From: Guillardia theta CCMP2712
Lineage: Eukaryota > Protista > Cryptophyta
Direction of reading: 5' to 3'
Length of the DNA: 64,000 nt
Assembly (NCBI RefSeq): GCF_000315625.1
Contig: NW_005434587.1
Span: 186,001-250,000 of the forward strand
Shown: positions 1 through 23,107 of the stretch, piece by piece
Layout: every line of letters begins with the position of its first letter
Numbering within the stretch: the stretch's first letter is position 1
Notes under the pieces: model-generated
Seen by the model: the letters and a program-made list of their open reading frames with translations, nothing else
The model's database searches: none
What the model was told of the DNA's origin: nothing
Translations under genes and position numbers: made by a program

Positions 1-3000
1 GCATCCCTGGCCTCAACCGAGGAGACTTCACCGAGGAGGACCCCTCCAACCTGCTGGCGCTGGAGGCGTTCAAGAAACGTTTGCACTCCATAGACAACCT
101 GCCGGTGGTTGACAACTACCCCGAGCCCAGCAAGGTCATGGACAAGATCCAGAGAGACCTGAAGAAGGTAGTGAAGCAGGTCTACGACAAGGAGACGAGG
201 AGGAGGCTGTTGAGCCCTCAGCGCAAGTTCAACCTCTCCTACTGCAGTGAGCCGATCGCTCACTACGTGCTGGACCCTGAGCCGGGGCTGCGACTCAACA
301 ACTACGTCGCATTCGATGACAGGAGCCTGATGCTGATCTTGGGCCCCAACGGCAGCGGCAAGACTTCCTTCATCAGGACATGGGCCAACATCTACGAGCT
401 GAGAAGATGCAAAGACGTCTTCTTCTTCCTCCACTTCGACCTCGGCGCTGCTGGGGTAGAATCAGCTCGGGGCGTGCTGAGGAGAATCTTGTTTGAGATG
501 AAGAAATTCTTCGGCATCGAAGGAGACGTTCCCATCGACTACGTGCAGATCAAGCGCACGTTCCTCTTGTGGATTCTGCTGGGGACGACCAAGGGTGGGG
601 TCATCCTGGTCATCGACGGGGCCGATGGGTTTGACGAGCCGAACGACGGGATCTTGTCGTTGCTTGAGTGCATACCGGAGACGCTCCCCAAGGGCCTCAA
701 GATCATCCTCTCCATGACTGCCGGCGCTCCTGTGTCGAATCTCATCTTGAAACGGATGCACTCCTGTCAAACCATCACCCTGGGCGCGCTCTCCGTTCAA
801 ACCCGACAAACGATCTGCGAATCTGTTTTCAAGTCACATGGAAGGGACCCCAAAGACCTCGATGATAAGATCATAAACGATACAGACAGCAGGTCTCCTA
901 TAAGCCTGAAGCTTAAAGTTCAATTGTATCTTCACACAGGTGAATTTTTCCACGCGCAGACGCTGCAACAGACTGTCTTACAGCTTCTGTCGTTGCTTGA
1001 AATGAAATTTCACGATCAGTCACCGGGTTTGGTAGAGACTGTTCTGACTTCCCTTGCAAGGTCTCGACGTGGATTGACGGATTCTGAGCTCATCGCAATT
1101 GGAGGGATCAACAGGCACATGTGGAGTAAATTTTCTCGAGCAAGTGAAGAACTTTTGACGGGGATGGCAAGTTTGGTGAACTTTCAGCATGAGATCATTG
1201 ACGAGGCAGTGAACATCAGATATCTCGATACCGAAGAGAAGAAGCAGAGGAGAACAGTCTCCCTGGCGACCTTCTTCGAAGCAAGTCCTCTCTCATTCCG
1301 CAAGGTGGAAGAATATCCCTGGCTGCTGGCAACCAACGCTCGGTACTGGTTCCAGACAGCACAGCCAAGCGAATACAAGAACGTCTGGAAGAAGCTCCGA
1401 GACTGTCTCACAGACTTGGACTTCTTTCAAGAGATCTATCAGGATTGCTTCGTTTCCGATTTGCATGATTTGTGGGAAGAAATGTCGTCGGTGTATGACC
1501 TGGTGGAAGAGTATACCAACAGTGTGAATGCATATGCGTCGAAGACAGCTTACAGCAGTTCTTCGGATAGAATCGTAGCCAAAGTGCATTTGGCTCTGTG
1601 CCAGACAAAAGTTGCGAGGTTCTTTCGAGATTGCTCTCGGTTTGAATCAGCGCAAGGCATGTTCCTGCGCTCGCTGGAGTCCTGGAAGCTTTGTCCTGGA
1701 AAGGAGAGGGAGGTGGTGAACGTTTACTTCGAGCTCGGGCTGATGCTGCGCACGTGGGGAAAATACGCGGAGGCCGAAGAGACGCTGAAGGGCTCCTTCG
1801 CCTTCATGGAGAATGCGCAAGGGAAGGAGAGCAGCGTCAAGATGGGAGAAGTCCTGCACTTCGTCTCAGATTGTCTTCGGCGGCAGAAGAAGGAGAGCGA
1901 GGCTTACTACTACGCCGACCGATCTTACCATCGGCTTCAGGACAGTCTGGATTCCGATCAGCTCGACAAGTCGCCGTTGTACGCGAGATGCTTGTACAAC
2001 CTGGGGGTAGTGTGTGAGATCCTGGACAGGAAGCAGGCGGCGCTCGAGCACTACGACAAGTCTGTGCTGGTGTTTGAAAGGTCTCTTGGCACTCTCAACG
2101 TGGAGTACTCGCAGGCCCTCGAGAGTCTCGCGGCCTCTTACCAAGGGGTCGGCGACCTCACCAAGGCTGCCGCCTCCTATCAGAAGCTCCTGCCGGTGAA
2201 GGCCGAGATGTCCTTCCTCGGCGGCAGCCTCGGCGACGTCACGTCAGCTCAGAACAACTTGGCGGCGATCTTCGTGAAGCTGGGAGACCTCAAGGCCGCA
2301 GAGGTCCTCTACCGCAAGGCCGTCAGGCATCGCGAGCACTACTACGGTCACTCCCACCCCACCGTAGCCAGATCCCTGGAGATGCTGGGGAACCTGCTGG
2401 CGGAGGTGGGAGAGCTGCAAGAAGCGACGTTGCTGCTGCAACGGGCGTTGAGTATCCGCAACGAAGTGTTTGGCAAAGACGACGTGGAGTCGGCTGCCAC
2501 GGTTCTGAACCTGAGCACGGTGCAGTGCCGACGGGGGCAGTACGTGTCAGGTCGCGACCTCTTCAAGAAGTGGCTGAGGATCATGCTGCAAGCTCTCGGC
2601 GCGAGTCACCCAACTTGCATCTGGGCTGTTCAGTGGCTCGACCGCTGGCCCGAGGGAGGAGCCCCGGGCAGCCGACTGTCCAAGGCAGACGACGGCCGGC
2701 ATGGAGCACTGCCGCCTGGCAAGCTGATAGTCAAGGTTCTGAGAGGAAGGAGGCTGAAGGCGATGGACAGCGGCAAGTCCAGCGACCCCTACGTGGTGGT
2801 TGAGCTGTCAGGGCAGCGGAAGAAGACCTGGCCCAAGATGAAGACAACGAACCCTGAATGGAATGAAGTCATGGAGTTCAACGTGAGTAAGGACGACAGG
2901 ATGAACGGGGAGTTAGCTCTGCAGTGCTTCGATAAGGATCTGATAGGAGAGGACGACAACATGGGATCTTTCACCTTCAAGGTCAACCAGGTGACTCTGC

Positions 3001-5560
3001 TTGACTTGTTGCATTGTGTTGACACCGTCACCTGTAGCTGCCGCTCGCCCAGCCCTATCGGGTCTGGCAGGCGTTTGATGACCCTGAGGAGTTTCCAGGG
3101 GAGATCGAGGTGGAGATGTTGCTGCTGGAGAACGAAGTGATCGGGATGCCCTTCCAAGCAAGCAAGGAGGGTCCAAGTCTCCTGACTCAGATCGAGGACA
3201 AGCGAAGAGCTGAGAAGTTGAGGGAGGAGCAGCTGGCAGATGCCTCGCAACAGCAGCAAGAGAGAGAAACGAGGATGAAAGTTCGAGAAAAGATCAACAG
3301 AGCGTCGGAAATGAAGATCGAGAGAGAGCGAAGGAGGGAGGCTAGGATAGCGGCTGGTTTGGATGCTGACATGGACAACGAGTCCGAAGCCCTGGAAGAC
3401 TTGGAAGAGGTCGATACGGGGGAGCAGGGACTTGAGGACAAGGGCGACGAGGCTGCTGCTGCTCACGAGCAGGCTGAAAGTCAAGGAGGAGATGATGCAA
3501 ACCTGGATGGAGACGCTGCAGAAGCGAGCAAGGATGAGGAAGAGGACGAGGCCTGGGACGATCAAGGCGCGTCGAGGCTCCACTACGCTGCGATGCATGG
3601 GAAGGAAGACAAAGTCAACGAGCTGCTGGACAAGAAGTTCAACCCCAATGTGCGAGACAAGGACGGGCTGTCTCCGCTCCATTACGCGTGCGGTGAGGGG
3701 CATCTGGGTATCGTGGTGATCCTCTTGGAGCGAGGAGGAGACCTGCTTGCCCAGGACAAGGACGGTGACGGGCCTCTGCACGTTGCCATCCAAGAGCACC
3801 AGGAAGAAGTCTGCACGCTCCTGTTGAAGCATCATCCCGACGTGGTGAACATGCGGGGGGCCCATGGCAACACTGCCCTGCACATGCTGGCGGCCATGGA
3901 GAGCGAGTGGGAGAGCATGTTGGTGAAGCTGTTGGAGAGCGGAGCTGACGCCACCATCAAGAACGATTACGGGGAGACTGCCGTCCAGATGGCCAAGGAC
4001 GTGTTCGATGCTATCTTCAATCACCCCCATTATCTCATCATCTGCAAGGCCCTGGGGTTGTCAGAGAGCAGCGATCAGGTCAAGGGAGCTCCTCTCAAGC
4101 CCAAGATCGCCCTCAAGCTCTGGTCGGTGATCGAGCAGAACGACACGGAGGTCATGTTGAAGTACCTCAGAGGAGGTCTGGACATCGATGGACGGCTGGA
4201 TGAGACAGGTCTGACGATGCTGATGCTCGCCTCACAGCAGCTGAGACGAGAGATGCTGGAGCTCATGGCGGATCCTGGTTGGGATTTGAACATCAACATC
4301 GCGACTGATACAGGGCAAACAGCTCTCCACCACCTCGTGCTCAACGGCAGAGCTCTCACGGTGGAGTGCCTCGATATCCTCTTGAAACTGAACCCCGATG
4401 CGAACATCCAGGACAGCAAGGGTTACACAGCGCTGCATTACGCAGCAGAGTTGTGCAGTGAAGAGGTGGTGAGGGTGTTGATCGAGAGGGGAGGAGCGGA
4501 CACGTTGGTGGCAACCCATGCTGGCGACACTCCCCTCCACCTGTCAGCGCTGGCGTGCAGAGGTGACGTGGTGCCTCTGCTGGTGAAGAAGCTTGAGATC
4601 AGATCGAAACAGCAGTTCACATTTGTGAACTCGGAGATGGCCATGAGAGATTTTATCAACAAGATCAACCAGGTCGGAGATACCGCCCTCCACCTCGCCT
4701 GCAGATCTGATTCAAACTCCCGCATCGTCAGCCTTCTGCTTCAGAACAGCGCCAACCTGCACTCCATGAACAAGTTTGAAGAGACTCCTCTCGACGTCGC
4801 GCAGAAGTACCGACAGGGAGATCTGATCAACCTGCTCAACGAGTGGTCGAAGAGCGAAGAGGCTTCTGTCAACACCGACCTCGTCAGAGACATCACTCGA
4901 TTCACCTTTGCGATCAAGGATGACGATCGCGAGACCGTGAAGACCATGCTCGCCTCGGGGCACTTTGAACTCAATGCGGCCTGCAATGAGATAGGGGACA
5001 CGTACTGCCACATCGCAGCAGCAGAAGGGCGGGTAGAGATCCTGAAGGAGCTCTTCTTGCAAGGTTCCTACCTTCACAACCAGAACCTGATCGGTTGCAC
5101 GCCCCTCCATGCGGCTGCGATGAGGGGGAGTGTGGGAGCCATCAAGTGGCTGCTGCAAAATGGAGCTGATCCTCGGGCAAGCGACAGCGAGGGGTACTGC
5201 CCGATGCACTACGCAGCTGGGGAAGGGCACGTGGAGGCCATCGACTGCCTGCTGAGCATCGGGAGATGCGACGAGACGCTCAAGACGTTTCAGGGGCTGA
5301 CCATGCTTCACATCGCGATATCGGAGAGAAGGAAAACCGTGGTCGAGTACCTCTTGAAGCGCAACCCGCAATTCGCCTCCATCTCAGACTCCGACGGGAA
5401 AGTACCGCTGGACTACTGCGACTTGAATGGGAACGACGAAGAGCTGGTCAAGCAGCTCAAGGTACTTGTTGATATCGTCACGTGTGATCTCACTCTTGTG
5501 TGCTAGGCTGCCAGCACTGGGAGCAGAGTAATGTTGCTGGTTGAAAACATGCGAAACTGA
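1..5560 (+). CDS. NPHP3-like STAND/NACHT P-loop NTPase + TPR repeats + C2 domain + ankyrin repeats (5'-truncated, 2 introns)
   Basis: The frame is open from the window start. Walker A GPNGSGKT and Walker B VILVIDGAD; TPR units (e.g. YARCLYNLGVVC, SAQNNLAAIF, HPTVARSLEMLG); C2 domain (GKLIVKVLRGRRLKAMD..SDPYV..NPEWNE..FDKDLIGEDDNMG). GT-AG intron 2991-3037 joins ORF 81..3140 in frame to ORF 3110..5506, which has many ankyrin G-x-T-[AP]-L-H motifs. Intron 5462-5506 then leads to TGA at 5558-5560. Confidence 0.88.
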
Positions 5561-6036
5561 AACTAACGCTGACTCGGTGCGGCCACTCGGAGGCCGCCAC
5601 TGACTCCTGCTGTCACGTCACAGTGCCGTCATGTCTATCTTGAACTTCAAGTTTGTGCATTAAAGTTTCTTGACTGAAATGGAAAAAGGCAAACCGAAGC
5701 AAACGCACTCAGGGCCGCTGTCAGCAGCTCCATGGTGATCCGTCAAGTACCAGAGAACCCGCAAAGCGTCAGCACTGATGAATATAAGACCATCCGTACC
5801 TGCAGTGAAGGGACTCCCGGAAGGCTTTCGGCGGGTGATGGGTAGAGCTCCATTGCGTAGCTACCATCGGGCCCGGAGAAGAGCTGCCTGAACCTGCCGG
5901 TATGGTAGCCTGATGGCCCCCCCGGCCCGCTAGTTTTACTCACCGGTGAGTTTTAGTTATCACACCGGGCCAGCCCCGCCGTGTCGAATGTGGTGTGAAA
6001 CGGCTCGTAACGGTTCAGCGAAGGGGCGCCGAAGCA

Positions 6037-8190
6037 ATGGTGGCAGTCTACGGAACCACCGGGAATGGCGTCCATGAGCGCATGTACCAGCGCAGTACCA
6101 GGTGAGAGGAATGAACTGAACGTGAAGGAAAATGAACATGAGGATGAACATGAGGATGAACATGAGGATGCGATCGAGAATGGAGGAGGTGTTGGAGGGA
6201 TGAAAGTGCAGGGTACAATCAGAGCGATTCTCATGTCTTTTGAAACTGTGTTAAGATGAGCTGGAGGTTTCCCATCAATTCAAAGATTCAGTTAGGTTAT
6301 GAATCATTACTGACTCTCCGATAGATCAGTTGATTGCATCTTCTCCTTACTTGTTCTCTCGAGACACTAACTCTATGTTTTCCCTGCAGCAACTCCAAGC
6401 GCACAGTTTTGGCTGTCGCATCTGTAGCCGTCGCATGTTTGTGCGCGTATCTTGTGGTTTCATCTGAAGTTCGAAGTGGGCCGGCAATGCTGTTGTTCCC
6501 CACACCCACCCTCAAAAATCTTCTTGGCACCTTCATGAGACAGCAAGGAGCTTCCAAGTCGGATATCTCCAAGATGAACAAGTATTACTCCAAGAAGGGA
6601 CGTGTTCAGATGCTCGACGACTTGAGCGGCGAGTTCGATCCCATCTCTGACGCTGACTCCAACTACGCCCGTGCCATCGGCATCAAGTCCGTCTCCAGGA
6701 CGAACCCCGTTATTACCGAGGACATGGACTTCTCGCCGGAGAAGAAGGGGCGTGTTCAGATGCTCGACGACTTGAGCGGCGAGTTCGATCCCATCTCTGA
6801 CGCTGACTCCAACTACGCCCGTGCCATCGGCATCAAGTCCGTCTCCAGGACGAACCCCGTTATTACCGAGGACATGGACTTCTCGCCGGAGAAGAAGGGG
6901 CGTGTTCAGATGCTCTACGATGTCGACGGCCCTCAGGTAATTCTGTTGTTAGGAATTTCGGTTTCGGTTGTATTGAATTTAAATTTCTCCAGGCTTCTGA
7001 TCCCAAGAAGACGGTTCTTGCCAGGCATGCGATCCATCAAAAGAACAGGGCTCAGAAACAGCAGGTTGGAACCTCAATCGCAGTTGCAAACATGCTTGAG
7101 ATACGCGATTGCATTGTTCTTTTCATGATAGCAAGTTGCGTTCTGTGGATATTCCTGCCTATTGAATATTGCAATTTGGCAGAAGAGCCTTGCATTCATG
7201 ATCAAGAATAACATTCTTGGAACTGCGGACAAAGCCAGAGTTCAGGTTTGATGTTTTGACAGCTGTGCAGCAGTCATTGAGTATCTCTCAGATGTTGTCC
7301 AATTCTGCAAGGAAGACGGTCAATGTCTGGCAACAGGTCTCGCTCCGATACTGTGCCATCAATGTTTGATCCGAGTTGCTTCACAGATTGGTGCTCAGGA
7401 GCCTTCCAATGCTGCGCAGTCAGTAATGAAGCAGAATGACGATGCCGGATACAAGGTTCCGTTTGACTCAATCTCTATGACACCTTACTTACTGGCGGTC
7501 AGGCTCCCACCCAGAAGCTCGACGACGTCAGCAGCGAGTTCGATCCCATCTCTGACGCTGACTCCAACTACGCCCGTGCCATCGGCATCAAGTCCGTCTC
7601 CAGGACGAACCCCGTTATTACCGAGGACATGGACTTCTCGCCAGAGAAGAAGGGGCGTGTTCAGATGCTCGACGACTTGAGCGGCGAGTTCGATCCCATC
7701 TCTGACGCTGACTCCAACTACGCCCGTGCCATCGGCATCAAGTCCGTCTCCAGGACGAACCCCGTTATTACTGAGGACATGGACTTCTCGCCGGAGAAGA
7801 AGGGGCGTGTTCAGATGCTTGACGACGTCAGCAGCGAGTTCGATCCCATCTCTGACGCTGACTCCAACTACGCCCGTGCCATCGGCATCAAGTCCGTCTC
7901 CAGGACGAACCCCGTTATTACCGAGGACATGGACTTCTCGCCGGAGAAGAAGGGGCGTGTTCAGATGCTCTACGATGCCGACGGCCCTCAGGTTCGAGAC
8001 CCATCATATAGTAGTCATGCTTGACTTGGCACACAGCCCAGTGATGGATCATCTGCAAGCTGGGCCGCCGCCGGACGCGTTGATCAGGTGCAGCAATTTT
8101 GTCATTGTTGTACATTGAGCTTCCAGTCAGGCTGGCCGGGCATCCAGCTCTCTTGCAAGGCAGATCCGAGCTGCTCAACCCCGGTTTTGA
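6037..8190 (+). CDS. Membrane-anchored repetitive polyprotein/peptide precursor (~480 aa, 9 exons)
   Basis: Deduced exons 6037-6101, 6390-6936, 6993-7064, 7183-7245, 7292-7318, 7387-7455, 7503-7991, 8037-8087, 8131-8190. All introns are GT-AG and the frame is kept. The N-terminus MVAVYGTT..NSKRT is followed by hydrophobic VLAVASVAVACLCAYLVV. Five 50-aa repeat units and repeated KKGRVQML/KARVQML/KAPTQKL motifs follow. Confidence 0.8.
6592..6936 (+). repeat. Coding tandem repeat, 150-nt unit, block 1 (2 full units + partial)
   Basis: Units start at 6592, 6742 and 6892 and are essentially identical at the nucleotide level. Confidence 0.95.
7521..7991 (+). repeat. Coding tandem repeat, 150-nt unit, block 2 (3 units + partial)
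   Basis: Cores start at 7521, 7671 and 7821, followed by the YDADGPQ module at 7971. Two core variants occur (DDLSGEF, DDVSSEF). Confidence 0.95.
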
Positions 8191-8681
8191 AAACTGAGAT
8201 TTTAAAGCATTTGTACAATACAGTGCAGAGTTGCAGAAACTTCATGCTCTCCTCATCCCATCAATGCTTCGGTTGTGTTGCTCAAAAGTTAGCATCACAA
8301 GAATGTCTCTAGAACTCTTTATTCATCATACTTCTCGTTCTCGTATGCATTTAGCAAGAGGAGTTGCCAAATGGGTCGCACACCTGTGTGACACTTCAGA
8401 TGTACATCTCAAAACATTAGACAAAACATAACAACAAAAAGAACACCAAACAATGAGCCAAACAATGATGGGGGGCGGGGGGCAGCAAGAAAGAAAATAA
8501 AAGCGAGTAGACTCCACCCACTTGAGTGGGATCCAGTGATGAAACATAATTAGCACAGGAATAAGAAAAGATGAACGAAGAGGACAGAGAAGTCCCTTCA
8601 AAGCCACCGATGCACCAAAGGCAAAGATGAGAAACTTGCAACATTGAGGTCAAACAAACGAGCTCAAGCCATGAAACGTGA

Positions 8682-8783
8682 TCAGAGGAAAACACTGGTG
8701 GAGATCTCCACCTTCTCGGGGGTCGAGAACTTGGCGCGCAGGAGCTTGTCGTTCTGGTAGGTGGAGATGAGCGAGGAGAACAT
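8682..8783 (-). CDS. 33-aa micropeptide MFSSLISTYQNDKLLRAKFSTPEKVEISTSVFL
   Basis: ATG in gcagcaATG context. 30 of 32 non-start codons end in G/C, against AT-richer flanks. It lies below the ORF-track size cutoff. Confidence 0.6.
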   Translation of the reverse strand: MFSSLISTYQNDKLLRAKFSTPEKVEISTSVFL

Positions 8784-20340: not shown

Positions 20341-20514
20341 ATTCTTGTTTTAGTAAGGGTCCGATTTTCATCATAGATCTCCAAAGAATTTGTTTTGACA
20401 CATCCTGGAATCAGGTGCTTGAATGATTGTGGGTTGCTAATGGTATCAAAACAACAAAACAATGGACAGTCCTATGAATGTTTGTTTTGGATACATCATC
20501 ATGTGAGTGGTAGA

Positions 20515-20547
20515 CACCACCACCACCACCACCACCACCACCACCAC
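20515..20547. repeat. (CAC)11 microsatellite
   Basis: Direct inspection; intergenic. Confidence 0.9.
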
Positions 20548-20877
20548 ATTCATCATTCTTGTCCTCATGTTCTCACTTGTTCTCATCAACTCTTTCATCT
20601 CTGCCATTCATCGGCTCATATCGCACCTCCAGCATTGCCTTTAGGGCGGCTGCCATGTCGGATTCCCCGACTATCTCTTATTTTTACTCACTTCACAATC
20701 CAAAAAGGCTGCCTCAGAGGTAACTTCAAGGCTAGTGACAAGTCACTCGAGCTGATAAATCGGATCGAACGATGTGTGTTCTTCGTTTGATGTTTATTCA
20801 GTTTGAAGTGAGCAATTCGTCACTACTATATCACAAGAAGATCGGACTACTGCTGAGCTGTCGATCTAGCTTGGCTT

Positions 20878-22339
20878 TCAAGGAGGGGGAGGAGCAGCGC
20901 AAAAGCTCTGAATCTTTTCGATGATAACCTGCGACAAGCAGGACGGTAAGATGACGTCATCAATGAATAAGGTGAAGGAAAGACCTGTAGGATGTAGATG
21001 GCTCGTTCAGCTGGAGGCGCGACAGTCTCATACTCCTCATGCTCGTCGTTGTAGGACTCAGCTGAGTTCTTCTTCAGGCCGTTCATCTTCTCGCGCTGCA
21101 TATCGGTTTCTGCTGACTTCTCTTTGGCCTTGTCGGCGGAGTTGGAGAGGTCAACAACTTCCTTCTCGTACTCGATGAGCTTGTTGAAGTGCGAGCTCAT
21201 CTCTTCCTTCGCCTCATCTTCCACCTTCTTGACAACTTCCTCGCGCGTCTCGAGCTCCTTGAGCATATCCTGCAGGAGCTTCCTGACCGCGCTCGTCTCT
21301 GTGAAGGAAGCGAGCTTCTGTTCCAGACTGTGAAATCCCTTGATCTTGACCGCATTGTTGGACTTCTGGGCCCACTCTTGCAGCTTTGAAAGCTTGGCCT
21401 TGATTTGCTGTTTCAAAAAGATTTCTCAACATCCCCGACAAACCAATCAATGTTCGCCCTTACCAACAAGGTGTTTGATTTACCAGTTTGTTTTGCCTGT
21501 GAGAATTGCATCAGGAAAAAAACAACATCGATTCGAACAATCAACCTGATCAGTGGGCTGACTTTCAAATGTGTCCAAAAGCAGAAGAATCTCCTTGATC
21601 AGCGCTCTATACAACGAGTCATCACCACTGTTCGTCACATTCAAGACCTTGGATACCTCTCAGCAGCAATGCTGGCCAGCTCCTTGGGATAAGATTTCTC
21701 GAGCTGTTGAACCCTCTCCTTGGCATCCTGGTATGATGCCTTCCACTTCTCGTACTGGACACGAGCGTAGGTAGCTCCTTCTTCTGCTTCTTTCGCCTTC
21801 TCAGACTCAAGCCTGTACGAGCTTTCCTCCTGCAACCAAGCTTGGAGAGATTCCTTCTTCTCTTCAAAAGATTTTGCATCAGTCAAGTTACGAGCAATAG
21901 CGTCGGCTGTAAGCTTGTTCAAGAGGGACGACAACTTTTCGATGATTACATCTTTTTTGTCGCAAACTTTGGAAGAGGACTCCTGGAGCATGGTATTGAT
22001 ACCCTTGGGGAACACCGCAAGCATTTGTGATCGGACATTGCGAGCTGAGACTTGCTTGTCTTGCCACTGCTGCAGCATGGCATACATTTGCTGAGTTGAA
22101 GCCTTGGGGACTACCGAAAGGATTTTTGAAGCCAAGGTCAAGTCGGACAACCTAAGGCTCGACTTGGTGGCCTTTGTGGTCATAGCAGTGGAGTTACGAT
22201 AGCCACGAGTGCTGAAGATCGCAACAGCAGCCATGGCGACGATGAAAACGCTGCCCACAATAGCCATGCGACTGGACTTCGCCCTCTTGGGACTGTTTCC
22301 AACATAGACGGTGAAGACTTGTTGGTCGACGGAAGTCAT
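20878..22339 (-). CDS. Type II membrane-anchored/secretory alpha-helical coiled-coil proprotein
   Basis: ORFs 21641..22363 and 20847..21416 join through short introns. TM segment MAIVGSVFIVAMAAVAIF, motifs RSQML, INTML and EQKL, long E/K-rich heptads, ending IIEKIQSFCAAPPPP*. Confidence 0.75.
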
Positions 22340-23107
22340 CTTGAGAACCTGCGCACGTTTCAAGAGGAGAAATCAAGAACTTGATCAAGACAACTTGTCA
22401 TGAAACACTATGCTCAGTCTTCATCGCCAGCAAACAAATGAAGCAATCAAATGAATTGTGCCAGATGCTAAAAGATTAACTTCATGCTTTCCAGCGACTT
22501 CCCTCATACATATCCCCCTCAACCACGCCATCCTTCCTCTCCCTCTCTCTCTCCCTTCCTCTCTCCCTCTCCCTCTCCCTCTCTCTCTCTCTCCCTCTCT
22601 CTCTCCCTCTCCCTCTCCCTCTCCCTCCGACTCCTCATTGCCGCTTTCATGACAGCCTCTGGTCACTCGACCCGATATAGAACAGGACCCCATGATGTGT
22701 CAACTTCTCGTACATGATAACCCCTACCCCCTTTTAATCATCTATCTGTAGTTCTAGATATGGTCCAGCCATGGCAAAAAGTCACCCACACCCTCCTAAA
22801 ATCAGCCACCCCCCTTGCCACATACGAAACATAAAAAAAGGTCAAAGACGGTACAGGATTCGGCAGCACTGAAGTCAACTTGAGACGTCTTCAAGTCGCC
22901 AGGACCGTCACCGTACTTGAAACTCGGCCGGGCCAGTATGCGAACATCGGATCATGTCGGGTCCGGCCCGGCAAGTTTCTGGGCCCGGGCGTGGGCGGTC
23001 ACGGTGTTCCGGAAGTGATTTCAGGTTTCATTACAGCACAGATCGTACGAAAAAGACCGTCTCTGAGACTCGAAAGAATAACAGCCGTCAACTCAGCAGT
23101 CCGAACA

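What the first reader, a model, noticed from the sequence alone, without database searches (positions are those of the whole stretch)
6037..8190. Modular polyprotein precursor punctuated by eight K-x-x-[VT]-Q-[MK]-L motifs: candidate undescribed peptide-processing system
Seen: after one TM anchor the spliced protein reads KKGRVQML|core|KKGRVQML|core|KKGRVQML|YDVDGPQASD..DKARVQML|SNSARKT..GYKAPTQKL|core|KKGRVQML|core|KKGRVQML|core|KKGRVQML|YDADGPQPSD..PRF. The core is a 42-aa acidic peptide, DD(L/V)S(G/S)EFDPISDADSNYARAIGIKSVSRTNPVITEDMDFSPE. The motif also delimits non-repeat segments; one copy (ARVQ|ML) is split by an intron and is invisible in the ORF track. It therefore looks like a functional signal rather than a by-product of duplication. 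Known: fungal Kex2-processed repeat proteins, alpha-factor and neuropeptide precursors use this one-gene-many-peptides design, but cleave at dibasic sites. Inference: a secretory-pathway protease cleaves after ..Q-M-L, possibly with trimming at KK, releasing several copies of structural (periplast, scale, extrusome) or signalling peptides.
Basis: partly seen in the sequence, partly recalled or inferred. Interest (0 to 1): 0.85.

Follow-up and report, generated by a model that had tools for sequence, protein, structure and literature searches.

The report
Cryptophyte modular precursor with heptapeptide punctuation
This is a real, spliced, strongly transcribed gene of a cryptophyte alga for a secreted, apparently unfolded protein built of 35-47-residue modules that each end in the same seven residues (K-A/G-R/P-V-Q-M-L), and this design recurs in over a hundred undescribed cryptophyte proteins, which suggests, without proving, that the proteins are cut at that motif into many small peptides.

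Summary
RNA contigs confirm all eight GT..AG introns and a 486-aa product. It has one N-terminal membrane anchor, five near-identical 42-aa acidic cores and eight K-x-x-[VT]-Q-[MK]-L copies, one of them split VQ|ML by an intron.

Six copies lie in 150-bp units that differ by only 1-5 nt, so within this gene they are not independent evidence. The decisive evidence is comparative:
- 112 related proteins carry 297 K-x3-Q-x-L motifs against about 6 expected from composition.
- Every named source is a cryptophyte: Baffinella, Rhodomonas, Hemiselmis, Guillardia.
- The motif ends at least seven module families that BLAST does not link.

The motif is therefore a selected, phylum-wide punctuation mark and not a by-product of duplication.

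AlphaFold2 models of two subfamilies have low confidence (pLDDT about 44), which suggests no globular fold. Pfam, PDB, the ESM Atlas and the literature hold nothing on the family.

Cleavage at the motif is the best reading (about 0.5). It parallels the diatom RXL-processed silaffin and silacidin precursors but has not been tested at protein level. An uncleaved scaffold with a repeated docking or cross-linking motif is the main rival.

I rate it a new variant of a known kind. The scan holds two other unchecked "polyprotein" notes on other DNA of this genome.

The parts
6037..8190 (+). Coding region of the gene: 9 exons, 486 aa, stop TGA at 8188-8190
   Evidence: Joints in RNA contigs and reads. 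Translation of the spliced exons.
6037..6101 (+). Exon 1: start codon and cytosolic N-flank. Intron 1 (6102-6389) holds a 12-nt repeat.
6390..6936 (+). Exon 2: membrane anchor, conserved N-domain (LLFPTPTLKNLLGTFM..QGAS..), repeat array 1 and the start of the YD module
   Evidence: N-domain conservation is visible in P0008, P0014, P0015, P0076 and P0058.
6403..6459 (+). Signal anchor or signal peptide core, aa 27-45 (TVLAVASVAVACLCAYLVV)
   Evidence: Hydropathy 2.5 over 19 residues; positive N-flank.
6592..6915 (+). Array 1: two 150-bp units (motif + 42-aa core) and a closing motif copy. Motif copies at 6592-6615, 6742-6765 and 6892-6915.
   Evidence: TRF and repeat finder. Unit comparison.
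6916..7227 (+). Basic 'YD' module (YDVDGPQASDPKK...ILGTA, aa 198-243, pI about 9.9), spread over exons 2, 3 and 4
   Evidence: Orthologous module in P0045, P0051-P0055 and P0003.
7228..7297 (+). Diverged motif copy DKARVQ|ML (7228-7245 + 7292-7297), split by intron 4 (7246-7291)
   Evidence: Joint 7241>7288 (cut +4), GT..AG, in X1 and X2. Codons differ from the repeat copies.
7298..7449 (+). 'VW' module (SNSARKTVNVWQQIGAQEPSNAAQSVMKQNDDAG, aa 252-285), spread over exons 5 and 6
   Evidence: The same module stands in tandem in P0028, P0057, P0061 and P0078.
7450..7520 (+). Diverged motif copy YK|APTQKL (7450-7455 + 7503-7520), split by intron 6 (7456-7502)
7503..7970 (+). Array 2: three 150-bp units and a closing motif copy. 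Motif copies at 7647-7670, 7797-7820 and 7947-7970.
7971..8187 (+). C-terminal tail module (YDADGPQPSDGSSASW...QIRAAQPRF, aa 444-486), spread over exons 7, 8 and 9
   Evidence: A conserved tail YDxDGPQ..SW..A...I.A..P ends most complete family members.
8191..8300 (+). 3' UTR, approximate end. Plus-strand read depth peaks at 8128-8224 and falls after 8224.
   Evidence: X18 raw RNA reads. The end is not mapped precisely.

Best explanation
The locus is a nuclear gene of a cryptophyte alga for a type-II-anchored or signal-peptide-bearing secretory protein. The luminal part is Cys-free, has no N-glycosylation sequon and is probably unfolded.

After a conserved N-domain it is a string of short modules: five acidic 42-aa cores, one basic 47-aa 'YD' module, one 35-aa 'VW' module and a 43-aa tail. 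Each module is closed by the heptapeptide K-[AG]-[RP]-[VT]-Q-[MK]-L.

The gene belongs to an undescribed superfamily known only from cryptophytes. In it, at least seven unrelated module families are all closed by K-[AGS]-[RP]-[VTL]-Q-[MQ]-L.

Most likely mechanism (inferred, not shown): the protein enters the ER by its anchor. In the Golgi or a post-Golgi compartment a sequence-specific endoprotease recognises the heptapeptide and cuts at or next to its final Leu. The heptapeptide is either kept as a C-terminal tag or trimmed off.

The first cut would free the chain from the membrane. The later cuts would release peptides of about 4-5 kDa in fixed stoichiometry: five acidic, one basic, one near-neutral and one tail. 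The high transcript level and the mix of acidic and basic products suggest building blocks of an abundant lineage-specific structure (ejectisome content, surface periplast or scales) more than hormones.

Steps shown: gene structure, transcription, repeat anatomy, conservation and over-representation of the motif, hydrophobic N-terminus, and absence of a predicted fold or known domain.
Steps inferred: secretory route, cleavage, position of the cut, fate and role of the peptides.

My odds: about 0.95 that this is a conserved punctuation motif of a new family, and about 0.5 that it is a proteolytic site.
For: 1. Real gene. Eight GT..AG joints in RNA contigs; contig depth 3283-3351 for exons 1-6 in X2 against 184 for the contig that joins exons 8-9 to the neighbouring gene's 3' end. 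Open 486-aa frame.
2. Selection on the motif within the gene. The two diverged copies keep K-A-[RP]-[VT]-Q-[MK]-L with different codons.
3. Breadth. An exhaustive phmmer search of 1.84 billion representatives gives about 35 true relatives. A profile search gives 82. All named sources are cryptophytes: Baffinella frigidus, Rhodomonas abbreviata, Hemiselmis andersenii and H. tepida, Guillardia theta.
4. Over-representation. 297 K-x3-Q-x-L in 26,590 residues of 112 family proteins against 5.8 expected. Segments between motifs fall into 7 clusters that BLAST does not link, with tight lengths of 34, 39-47 and 43 aa.
5. Position weights over 177 sites: K 98%, A/G/S, R/P, V 66%, M 76%. Q and L were fixed by the search pattern. 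An unforced check finds Q at the fixed offset after 74 of 87 cores, and many of the exceptions are unspliced 'VQVR' intron read-throughs.
6. Any module type can follow any other, always through the motif. Copy numbers differ between close orthologues.
7. A motif copy often follows directly after the signal sequence (P0065, P0027..LVQYQKL|DD), like a propeptide site.
8. Modules are not exons. The introns of this gene cut inside modules and inside two motif copies. The Baffinella orthologue has a single intron inside a core.
9. No fold. AlphaFold2 gives pLDDT 43.9 / pTM 0.13 (core-type orthologue) and 43.8 / 0.16 (complete PDAG-type member), with the module region below 50 throughout.
10. A hydrophobic N-terminus is present in 48 of 111 relatives; most of the other 63 start inside a module and are evidently truncated.
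11. Precedent. Diatom Sil1p repeats end in RRIL/RRNL, which are removed on maturation, and RXL closes the repeats of frustulins, cingulins and silacidins (PMC4557024).
Against: - There is no protein-level evidence of any cut.
- Seven conserved residues with a near-invariant Lys at P7 is long for a cellular endoprotease site.
- The invariant K and Q could equally mark a transglutaminase-type cross-link or a docking motif.
- No candidate protease lies in the window.
- Both AlphaFold2 runs used shallow alignments (22 and 14 rows), so 'unfolded' is only suggestive.
- Family counts include close orthologues and fragments, so the 177 and 297 sites are not independent events.
- The contig holding exons 8-9 is far shallower than the upstream exons in X2 (184 against about 3300). 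This is unexplained.
Confidence: 0.5

Rival explanations
1. Uncleaved multivalent scaffold. The protein stays intact, either membrane-anchored or shed once. The heptapeptide is a repeated short linear motif that docks a partner or is a site of covalent cross-linking. The invariant Lys and Gln, four residues apart, would suit a transglutaminase-type isopeptide bond that knits a surface or extrusome matrix.
For: - K (98%) and Q are the most constant positions.
- The chain has no confidently predicted fold, as in many scaffold and matrix proteins.
- The 41-54-aa spacing is regular.
- High expression fits a matrix protein.
- Nothing shows cleavage.
Against: - The final Leu and the hydrophobic V..ML are as constant as K and Q, which cross-linking does not require.
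- A motif copy directly after the signal sequence in P0065-type members looks like a propeptide site.
- Free shuffling and copy-number change of unrelated modules is typical of precursors.
- No transglutaminase link was tested.
Confidence: 0.3
2. Structural repeat. All modules are diverged copies of one ancient unit of about 45 aa. The heptapeptide is its most constrained part, for example a beta-strand that stacks between units or molecules (a cross-beta or solenoid-like fibre). Neither cleavage nor a partner is involved.
For: - Constant module lengths.
- YD(V/A)DG resembles the core start DD(V/L)SG.
- V-Q-M-L is a short hydrophobic patch in a hydrophilic chain.
Against: - Module families show no detectable similarity to each other outside the motif.
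- AlphaFold2 predicts no strand pairing or solenoid in either subfamily.
- Half of the sites have Pro at the third motif position, which fits a regular strand poorly.
Confidence: 0.12
3. By-product of recent tandem duplication. The motif recurs only because a 150-bp unit was amplified. It has no function of its own.
For: Six of the eight copies in this gene sit in units that differ by 1-5 nt.
Against: - The two diverged copies conserve the residues with different codons.
- The motif closes unrelated modules in other genera and other subfamilies.
- It is about 50-fold over-represented.
Confidence: 0.02

Closest known systems
Diatom RXL-processed biosilica precursors (Sil1p silaffins, silacidins, cingulins, frustulins)
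   Same: - Algal secretory precursor with a signal sequence.
- Tandem short peptide units, each closed by a short motif that ends in Leu, with a further copy just after the signal sequence.
- The motif (RRIL/RRNL) is absent from the mature peptides (PMC4557024).
- Silacidins are likewise acidic peptides.
   Different: - The motif here is K-A-x-V-Q-M-L, seven residues, with Gln and not Arg at P3.
- No Lys/Ser-rich silaffin composition.
- Cryptophytes make no silica.
- No sequence homology.
- Cleavage is untested here.
Fungal Kex2-processed repeat proteins (KEPs), alpha-factor and Ustilago Rep1-type precursors
   Same: One gene yields many peptides: a signal sequence followed by repeated cores flanked by a constant site, with variable copy number between species (PMC7329392, PMC6339444).
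   Different: - KEPs are defined by dibasic KR/RR sites. Here KK is a peculiarity of this species, and orthologues have E-R-K-A-P or D-K-A-P.
- The constant part here ends in Q-M-L.
- The cores are 34-47 aa, longer than typical KEP cores (my recollection, not checked here).
- One protein carries several unrelated module types.
PEXEL/TEXEL export motifs of Apicomplexa (RxLxE/Q/D, cut after Leu by plasmepsin V / ASP5); from general knowledge
   Same: P1 is Leu, and P2' is Asp or Glu at 75% of sites. Cleavage would take place in the early secretory pathway.
   Different: P3 is Gln, not Arg. There are many copies per protein, not one near the N-terminus. The lineage is different and no protease has been identified.
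Site-1 protease / SKI-1 substrates (R-x-hydrophobic-L); from general knowledge
   Same: A non-basic P1 (Leu) with a hydrophobic P2 (Met), cut by a Golgi subtilase.
   Different: P4 is Val, Thr or Leu, not Arg or Lys. The basic residues sit at P7, and at P5 in only half of the sites.
Plastid-targeted polyproteins of Euglena and dinoflagellates (LHC, RbcS, PCP units joined by short linkers); from general knowledge
   Same: Polyprotein design in a protist alga with constant short linkers.
   Different: Those units are known folded proteins bound for the plastid. Here the modules have no Pfam or PDB relative, no predicted fold and no transit-peptide-like region.

Membership tests
Kex2-processed repeat proteins / prohormone-type precursors | N-terminal signal sequence | tested here: met
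   Hydrophobic segment at aa 27-45 with a positive N-flank. Relatives with apparently intact N-termini also have one.
Kex2-processed repeat proteins / prohormone-type precursors | Several peptide cores in tandem | tested here: met
   Five 42-aa cores plus three other modules.
Kex2-processed repeat proteins / prohormone-type precursors | Conserved dibasic (KR/RR) site flanking every core | tested here: not met
   KK occurs in this species only. The position before K is R, Y, E, D, T or K across the family, and the constant residues are K..Q.L.
Diatom RXL-processed precursors | Each repeat closed by R-x-L | tested here: not met
   The last three residues are Q-[MQKS]-L at all 177 sites. Arg occurs only at position -5, in 44% of sites.
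Diatom RXL-processed precursors | Motif removed from the mature peptides; association with silica | not testable with these tools
   No proteomic data could be reached. That cryptophytes lack silica walls is general knowledge.
PEXEL/TEXEL | Single RxLxE/Q/D shortly after the signal sequence | tested here: not met
   Eight copies along the chain. P3 is Gln. P2' is D or E at 75% of sites only.
S1P/SKI-1 substrates | Arg or Lys at P4, hydrophobic P2, Leu/Thr/Lys/Phe at P1 | tested here: not met
   P4 is V 66%, T, L, E, M or S. P2 (Met) and P1 (Leu) do fit.
Plastid polyproteins (Euglena, dinoflagellates) | Units are known plastid proteins | tested here: not met
   No Pfam family passes with a significant stretch of its own in exon-wise queries or in seven relatives. 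There is no PDB relative.
New cryptophyte K-A-x-V-Q-M-L modular family (proposed here) | Signal or anchor sequence, two or more short modules each closed by K-[AGS]-x-x-Q-x-L, no known domain | tested here: met
   105 of the 112 collected relatives have at least one motif.
New cryptophyte K-A-x-V-Q-M-L modular family (proposed here) | Proteolytic release of the modules | not testable with these tools
   This needs peptidomics, N-terminomics or immunoblots.

The most novel reading that the evidence does not exclude
Cryptophytes have their own proprotein-processing code. A dedicated secretory protease reads K-A-x-V-Q-M-L and cuts a whole superfamily of polyproteins into dozens of different 35-50-residue peptides. 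Acidic and basic peptides then co-assemble into a lineage-specific structure such as the ejectisome content or the surface periplast. The system would be analogous to the diatom RXL system but independent of it.
Probability: 0.4. Interest if true: 0.82.

Novelty: new variant of a known kind. Interest (0 to 1): 0.68.

Why it matters
To my knowledge almost nothing is known at the molecular level about the proteins of the cryptophyte periplast and scales, or about ejectisome proteins other than the ribbon proteins. I did not check this systematically.

This gene exposes a large, highly expressed family known only from cryptophytes, with an unusually strict seven-residue punctuation mark. That gives three things:
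- a concrete protease-specificity hypothesis that one semi-specific re-search of any cryptophyte proteome could settle;
- a sequence handle (the motif) for cataloguing a whole class of secreted peptides in an ecologically important algal phylum;
- a second, independent case beside diatom RXL of Leu-terminated repeat processing in algae with red-algal plastids.

If the motif turns out to be a docking or cross-linking site, it would still define a new extracellular matrix protein family.

Tried and rejected
1. Known domains. Pfam on exon-wise translations and on seven relatives gave only sub-threshold sums over repeats, with no significant stretch of their own. A PDB profile search gave 0 hits at E<=1. 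The ESM Atlas gave no usable hit.

2. Literature. Motif and core strings, accession numbers and locus tags of relatives, 'polyprotein + Guillardia theta', and ejectisome or periplast proteomics turned up nothing relevant.

3. 'Only a duplication artefact'. Rejected on comparative grounds.

4. Exon-shuffling origin of the modules. Rejected: introns fall inside modules and inside two motif copies, and the Baffinella gene has one intron, inside a core.

5. Self-cleavage by N-O/N-S shift. Unlikely: P1' is D, Y, A or F (Ser at only 8 of 177 sites) and never Thr or Cys.

6. 2A-type ribosome skipping. No NPGP-like string is present.

7. Folded repeat domain. Neither AlphaFold2 model supports it. I ran no fold search because the models are too poor to be meaningful.

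8. It has no homology to the family profile (hhalign probability 0.4%) and no strict motif. It has only the loose strings VRSQML and KASTQQM.

9. Weak hits P0030, P0032, P0034 and P0039-P0041. I excluded them: P0032, P0039 and P0041, once read, are TPR or other repeat proteins; P0030, P0034 and P0040 were dropped on their scores alone (19-35% identity, 1371-3346 aa, several short stretches) without reading them.

10. The full spliced protein has no reference, so it was never sent to a database tool. I used exon-wise references and orthologues instead.
Full report
**Observation**

The region was read and translated. Two arrays of a 150-bp unit stand at 6592-6920 (2.2 copies, 98% matches) and 7512-7975 (3.1 copies, 95%).

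Public runs were found for the stretch and four were laid on 5800-8700. Contigs of X1 and X2 lack the introns and cover only exons. They show eight joints, all GT..AG once the stated cut offsets are applied. The last two joints also appear in raw RNA-seq reads of X18.

The resulting exons are 6037-6101, 6390-6936, 6993-7064, 7183-7245, 7292-7336, 7387-7455, 7503-7991, 8037-8087 and 8131-8190. They give an open frame of 486 aa ending ..AAQPRF-stop. All eight motif copies are there, and intron 4 does split DKARVQ|ML.

One hydrophobic segment (aa 27-45) with a positively charged N-flank is the only candidate membrane segment. The rest of the chain has no Cys and no N-glycosylation sequon.

Contig depth for exons 1-6 is 3283-3351 in X2 and 134-247 in X1. 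The contigs that reach into the neighbouring gene show 184 and 23. The gene is therefore strongly transcribed.

**How much of the repetition is independent**

The 150-bp units differ from each other by only 1-5 nt. The exception is the first unit of array 2, whose 5' edge is degenerate. Both arrays close with the same 45 nt (KKGRVQMLYD[V/A]DGPQ) followed by an intron.

So six KKGRVQML copies are one sequence, recently amplified or homogenised. Within this gene they say nothing about selection.

The two other copies do. KARVQML is encoded AAA GCC AGA GTT CAG ATG TTG and KAPTQKL is encoded AAG GCT CCC ACC CAG AAG CTC, against AAG GG[AG] CGT GTT CAG ATG CTC in the units. The residues are kept while synonymous sites have drifted.

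A six-frame scan of all 64 kb finds the motif in no other place. Shuffles give 0.14 hits.

**Relatives**

An exhaustive phmmer search with exon 7 against 1.84 billion representative proteins returned 41 hits, about 35 of them true. Of the six I excluded, three proved on reading to be TPR or other repeat proteins and three were dropped on their scores alone. Word-indexed searches with an orthologue and with a family profile raised the set to 82 scored relatives and 112 collected sequences.

Every relative that carries an organism name is a cryptophyte:
- Baffinella frigidus (KAJ1478669.1, KAJ1486448.1)
- Rhodomonas abbreviata
- Hemiselmis andersenii and H. tepida
- Guillardia theta (GUITHDRAFT_165895, a paralogue)

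The rest come from metagenomes and metatranscriptomes. All are labelled hypothetical or uncharacterised apart from one evidently spurious 'DUF302 family' label from a source. None has a precomputed Pfam domain apart from one listed family on a 186-aa fragment.

**What the relatives show**

Orthologues such as P0045, P0051, P0052 and P0054 repeat the architecture of the window gene: cores, YD module, VW module, cores, tail. Their copy numbers differ.

Other subfamilies use quite different modules:
- 'PDAG' modules (..LPDAGxxGT[ND]xAF..GxGQST)
- WANDD..TYWN modules
- a CGxGGPCP module
- ASILGSGAxRR..GFGTD modules
- a YEW..GGIPG tail

In all of them each module is closed by K-[AGS]-[RP]-[VTL]-Q-[MQ]-L, and the next module starts at once.

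Over 177 sites the Lys is 98% constant. Position 2 is A, G or S. Position 3 is R or P in equal shares, position 4 is V in 66% and position 6 is M in 76%. Q and L were fixed by my search pattern. An unforced check at a fixed offset after 87 cores still finds Q in 74. Many of the exceptions read VQVR, which is an unspliced intron after VQ, the very position of intron 4 here.

The 112 proteins hold 297 K-x3-Q-x-L against 5.8 expected from composition. The segments between motifs fall into seven clusters that BLAST does not link, with narrow length ranges. These counts include close orthologues and fragments, so they are not independent events. The diversity of flanking modules is the stronger argument.

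Forty-eight of the 111 relatives have a hydrophobic N-terminus. Most of the other 63 start inside a module and are evidently truncated ORF calls; a few have unclear starts.

**Structure and known domains**

AlphaFold2 was run on a core-type orthologue (22-row alignment) and on a complete PDAG-type member (14 rows). The models have pLDDT 43.9 and 43.8, and pTM 0.13 and 0.16. The module region is below 50 throughout. Only the signal helix and the C-terminal tail rise to about 60-69.

The alignments are shallow, so this suggests the absence of a globular fold but does not prove it. Pfam, PDB and the ESM Atlas gave nothing.

The Baffinella orthologue has a single intron, inside a core. The introns of the window gene cut modules and motifs. 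The modules are therefore not exon units.

**Mechanism**

The data establish a secretory, probably unfolded 'beads on a string' protein family whose one universal element is a heptapeptide at every module boundary.

The arguments are:
- unrelated modules of fixed length that shuffle freely and vary in number;
- a motif copy right after the signal sequence in some members, like a propeptide site;
- a motif far more constrained than the modules it separates;
- a close precedent in diatoms, where Sil1p repeats end in RRIL/RRNL that are missing from the mature silaffins, and RXL closes the repeats of other wall-protein precursors (PMC4557024).

In this gene, cleavage would give five acidic peptides (pI 4.05, charge -6), one basic peptide (pI 9.9, +4), one near-neutral peptide and a tail, each 3.8-5.2 kDa. 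High expression and mixed charges point to assembly of an abundant structure more than to signalling. This last step is inference only.

I cannot place the scissile bond. Leu as P1 is suggested by the module boundaries, but a cut elsewhere in the heptapeptide is not excluded.

**Rivals**

The main rival is an uncleaved scaffold in which the motif is a docking or cross-linking site. The invariant Lys and Gln would suit an isopeptide bond, and no result here excludes it.

A purely structural repeat is less likely. The module families are unrelated, Pro is frequent in the motif and no strand stacking is predicted.

'By-product of duplication' is contradicted by the comparative data.

**Comparison and novelty**

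The design works like Kex2-processed repeat proteins (PMC7329392, PMC6339444) and like diatom RXL precursors. It fails the defining site of each: it has no conserved dibasic pair, no R-x-L, no P4 Arg as in S1P substrates and no P3 Arg as in PEXEL.

The family and its motif appear in no paper that I could search. I rate it a new variant of a known kind, namely multi-peptide secretory precursors, with a new and unusually long punctuation motif. The caveat is that processing itself is untested.

**Surroundings**

Neighbouring ORFs encode NACHT-TPR-C2, ankyrin, DnaJ, MFS, patatin, HMG-box and PRELI proteins. No protease was seen among the large ORFs.

Two earlier notes of this scan mention other 'polyprotein' candidates elsewhere in the same genome. 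I could not see their sequences.

Noticed in passing
window 8225-8420, minus strand: A convergent transcript. X18 reads lie on the opposite strand at 8225-8418 (depth up to 163). 35 reads carry a poly-T loose end before 8304, so a minus-strand mRNA is polyadenylated near 8304, within about 100 nt of this gene's 3' end.
   Followed up: no
window 8031-8224 compared with 6020-7562: In X2 the contig with exons 8-9 has mean depth 184, against about 3300 for the contigs of exons 1-2 and 3-7. In X1 the figures are 73 against 134-247. Possible causes are coverage loss near the transcript end, an alternative 3' end, or more linker copies in the real gene than in the assembly.
   Followed up: no
window 6600-6751: A low-depth DNA contig of run X14 joins 6600 to 6751 and so lacks one 150-bp unit. 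This is either an assembler collapse of the repeat or a copy-number variant.
   Followed up: no
window 6132-6170 (intron 1): A perfect 12-nt tandem repeat, ATGAACATGAGG x3.2, inside the 288-nt first intron.
   Followed up: no
window 20847-22363, minus strand: An ORF pair for a membrane-anchored protein whose sequence looks coiled-coil-like by eye, with VRSQML and KASTQQM strings. It is not related to the family profile (hhalign probability 0.4%) and does not fit the strict motif.
   Followed up: partly
relatives P0005, P0008, P0014, P0053, P0055, P0056: Metagenome ORF calls that run ..KARVQ-VR.. and then lose similarity. This indicates an unspliced phase-0 intron after VQ (CAG|GT). An intron inside the motif, as in intron 4 here, therefore recurs in other cryptophyte genomes.
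   Followed up: partly
window 81-5506, plus strand: Two long, overlapping open frames encode a NACHT-TPR-C2 protein and a protein with many ankyrin repeats, directly upstream of the gene.
   Followed up: partly
window 20446-20644: A simple-sequence tract that reads as an 11-residue His run in one plus-strand frame, an 11-residue Thr run in another plus-strand frame and an 11-residue Val run on the minus strand. It stands next to the 20847-22363 gene.
   Followed up: no
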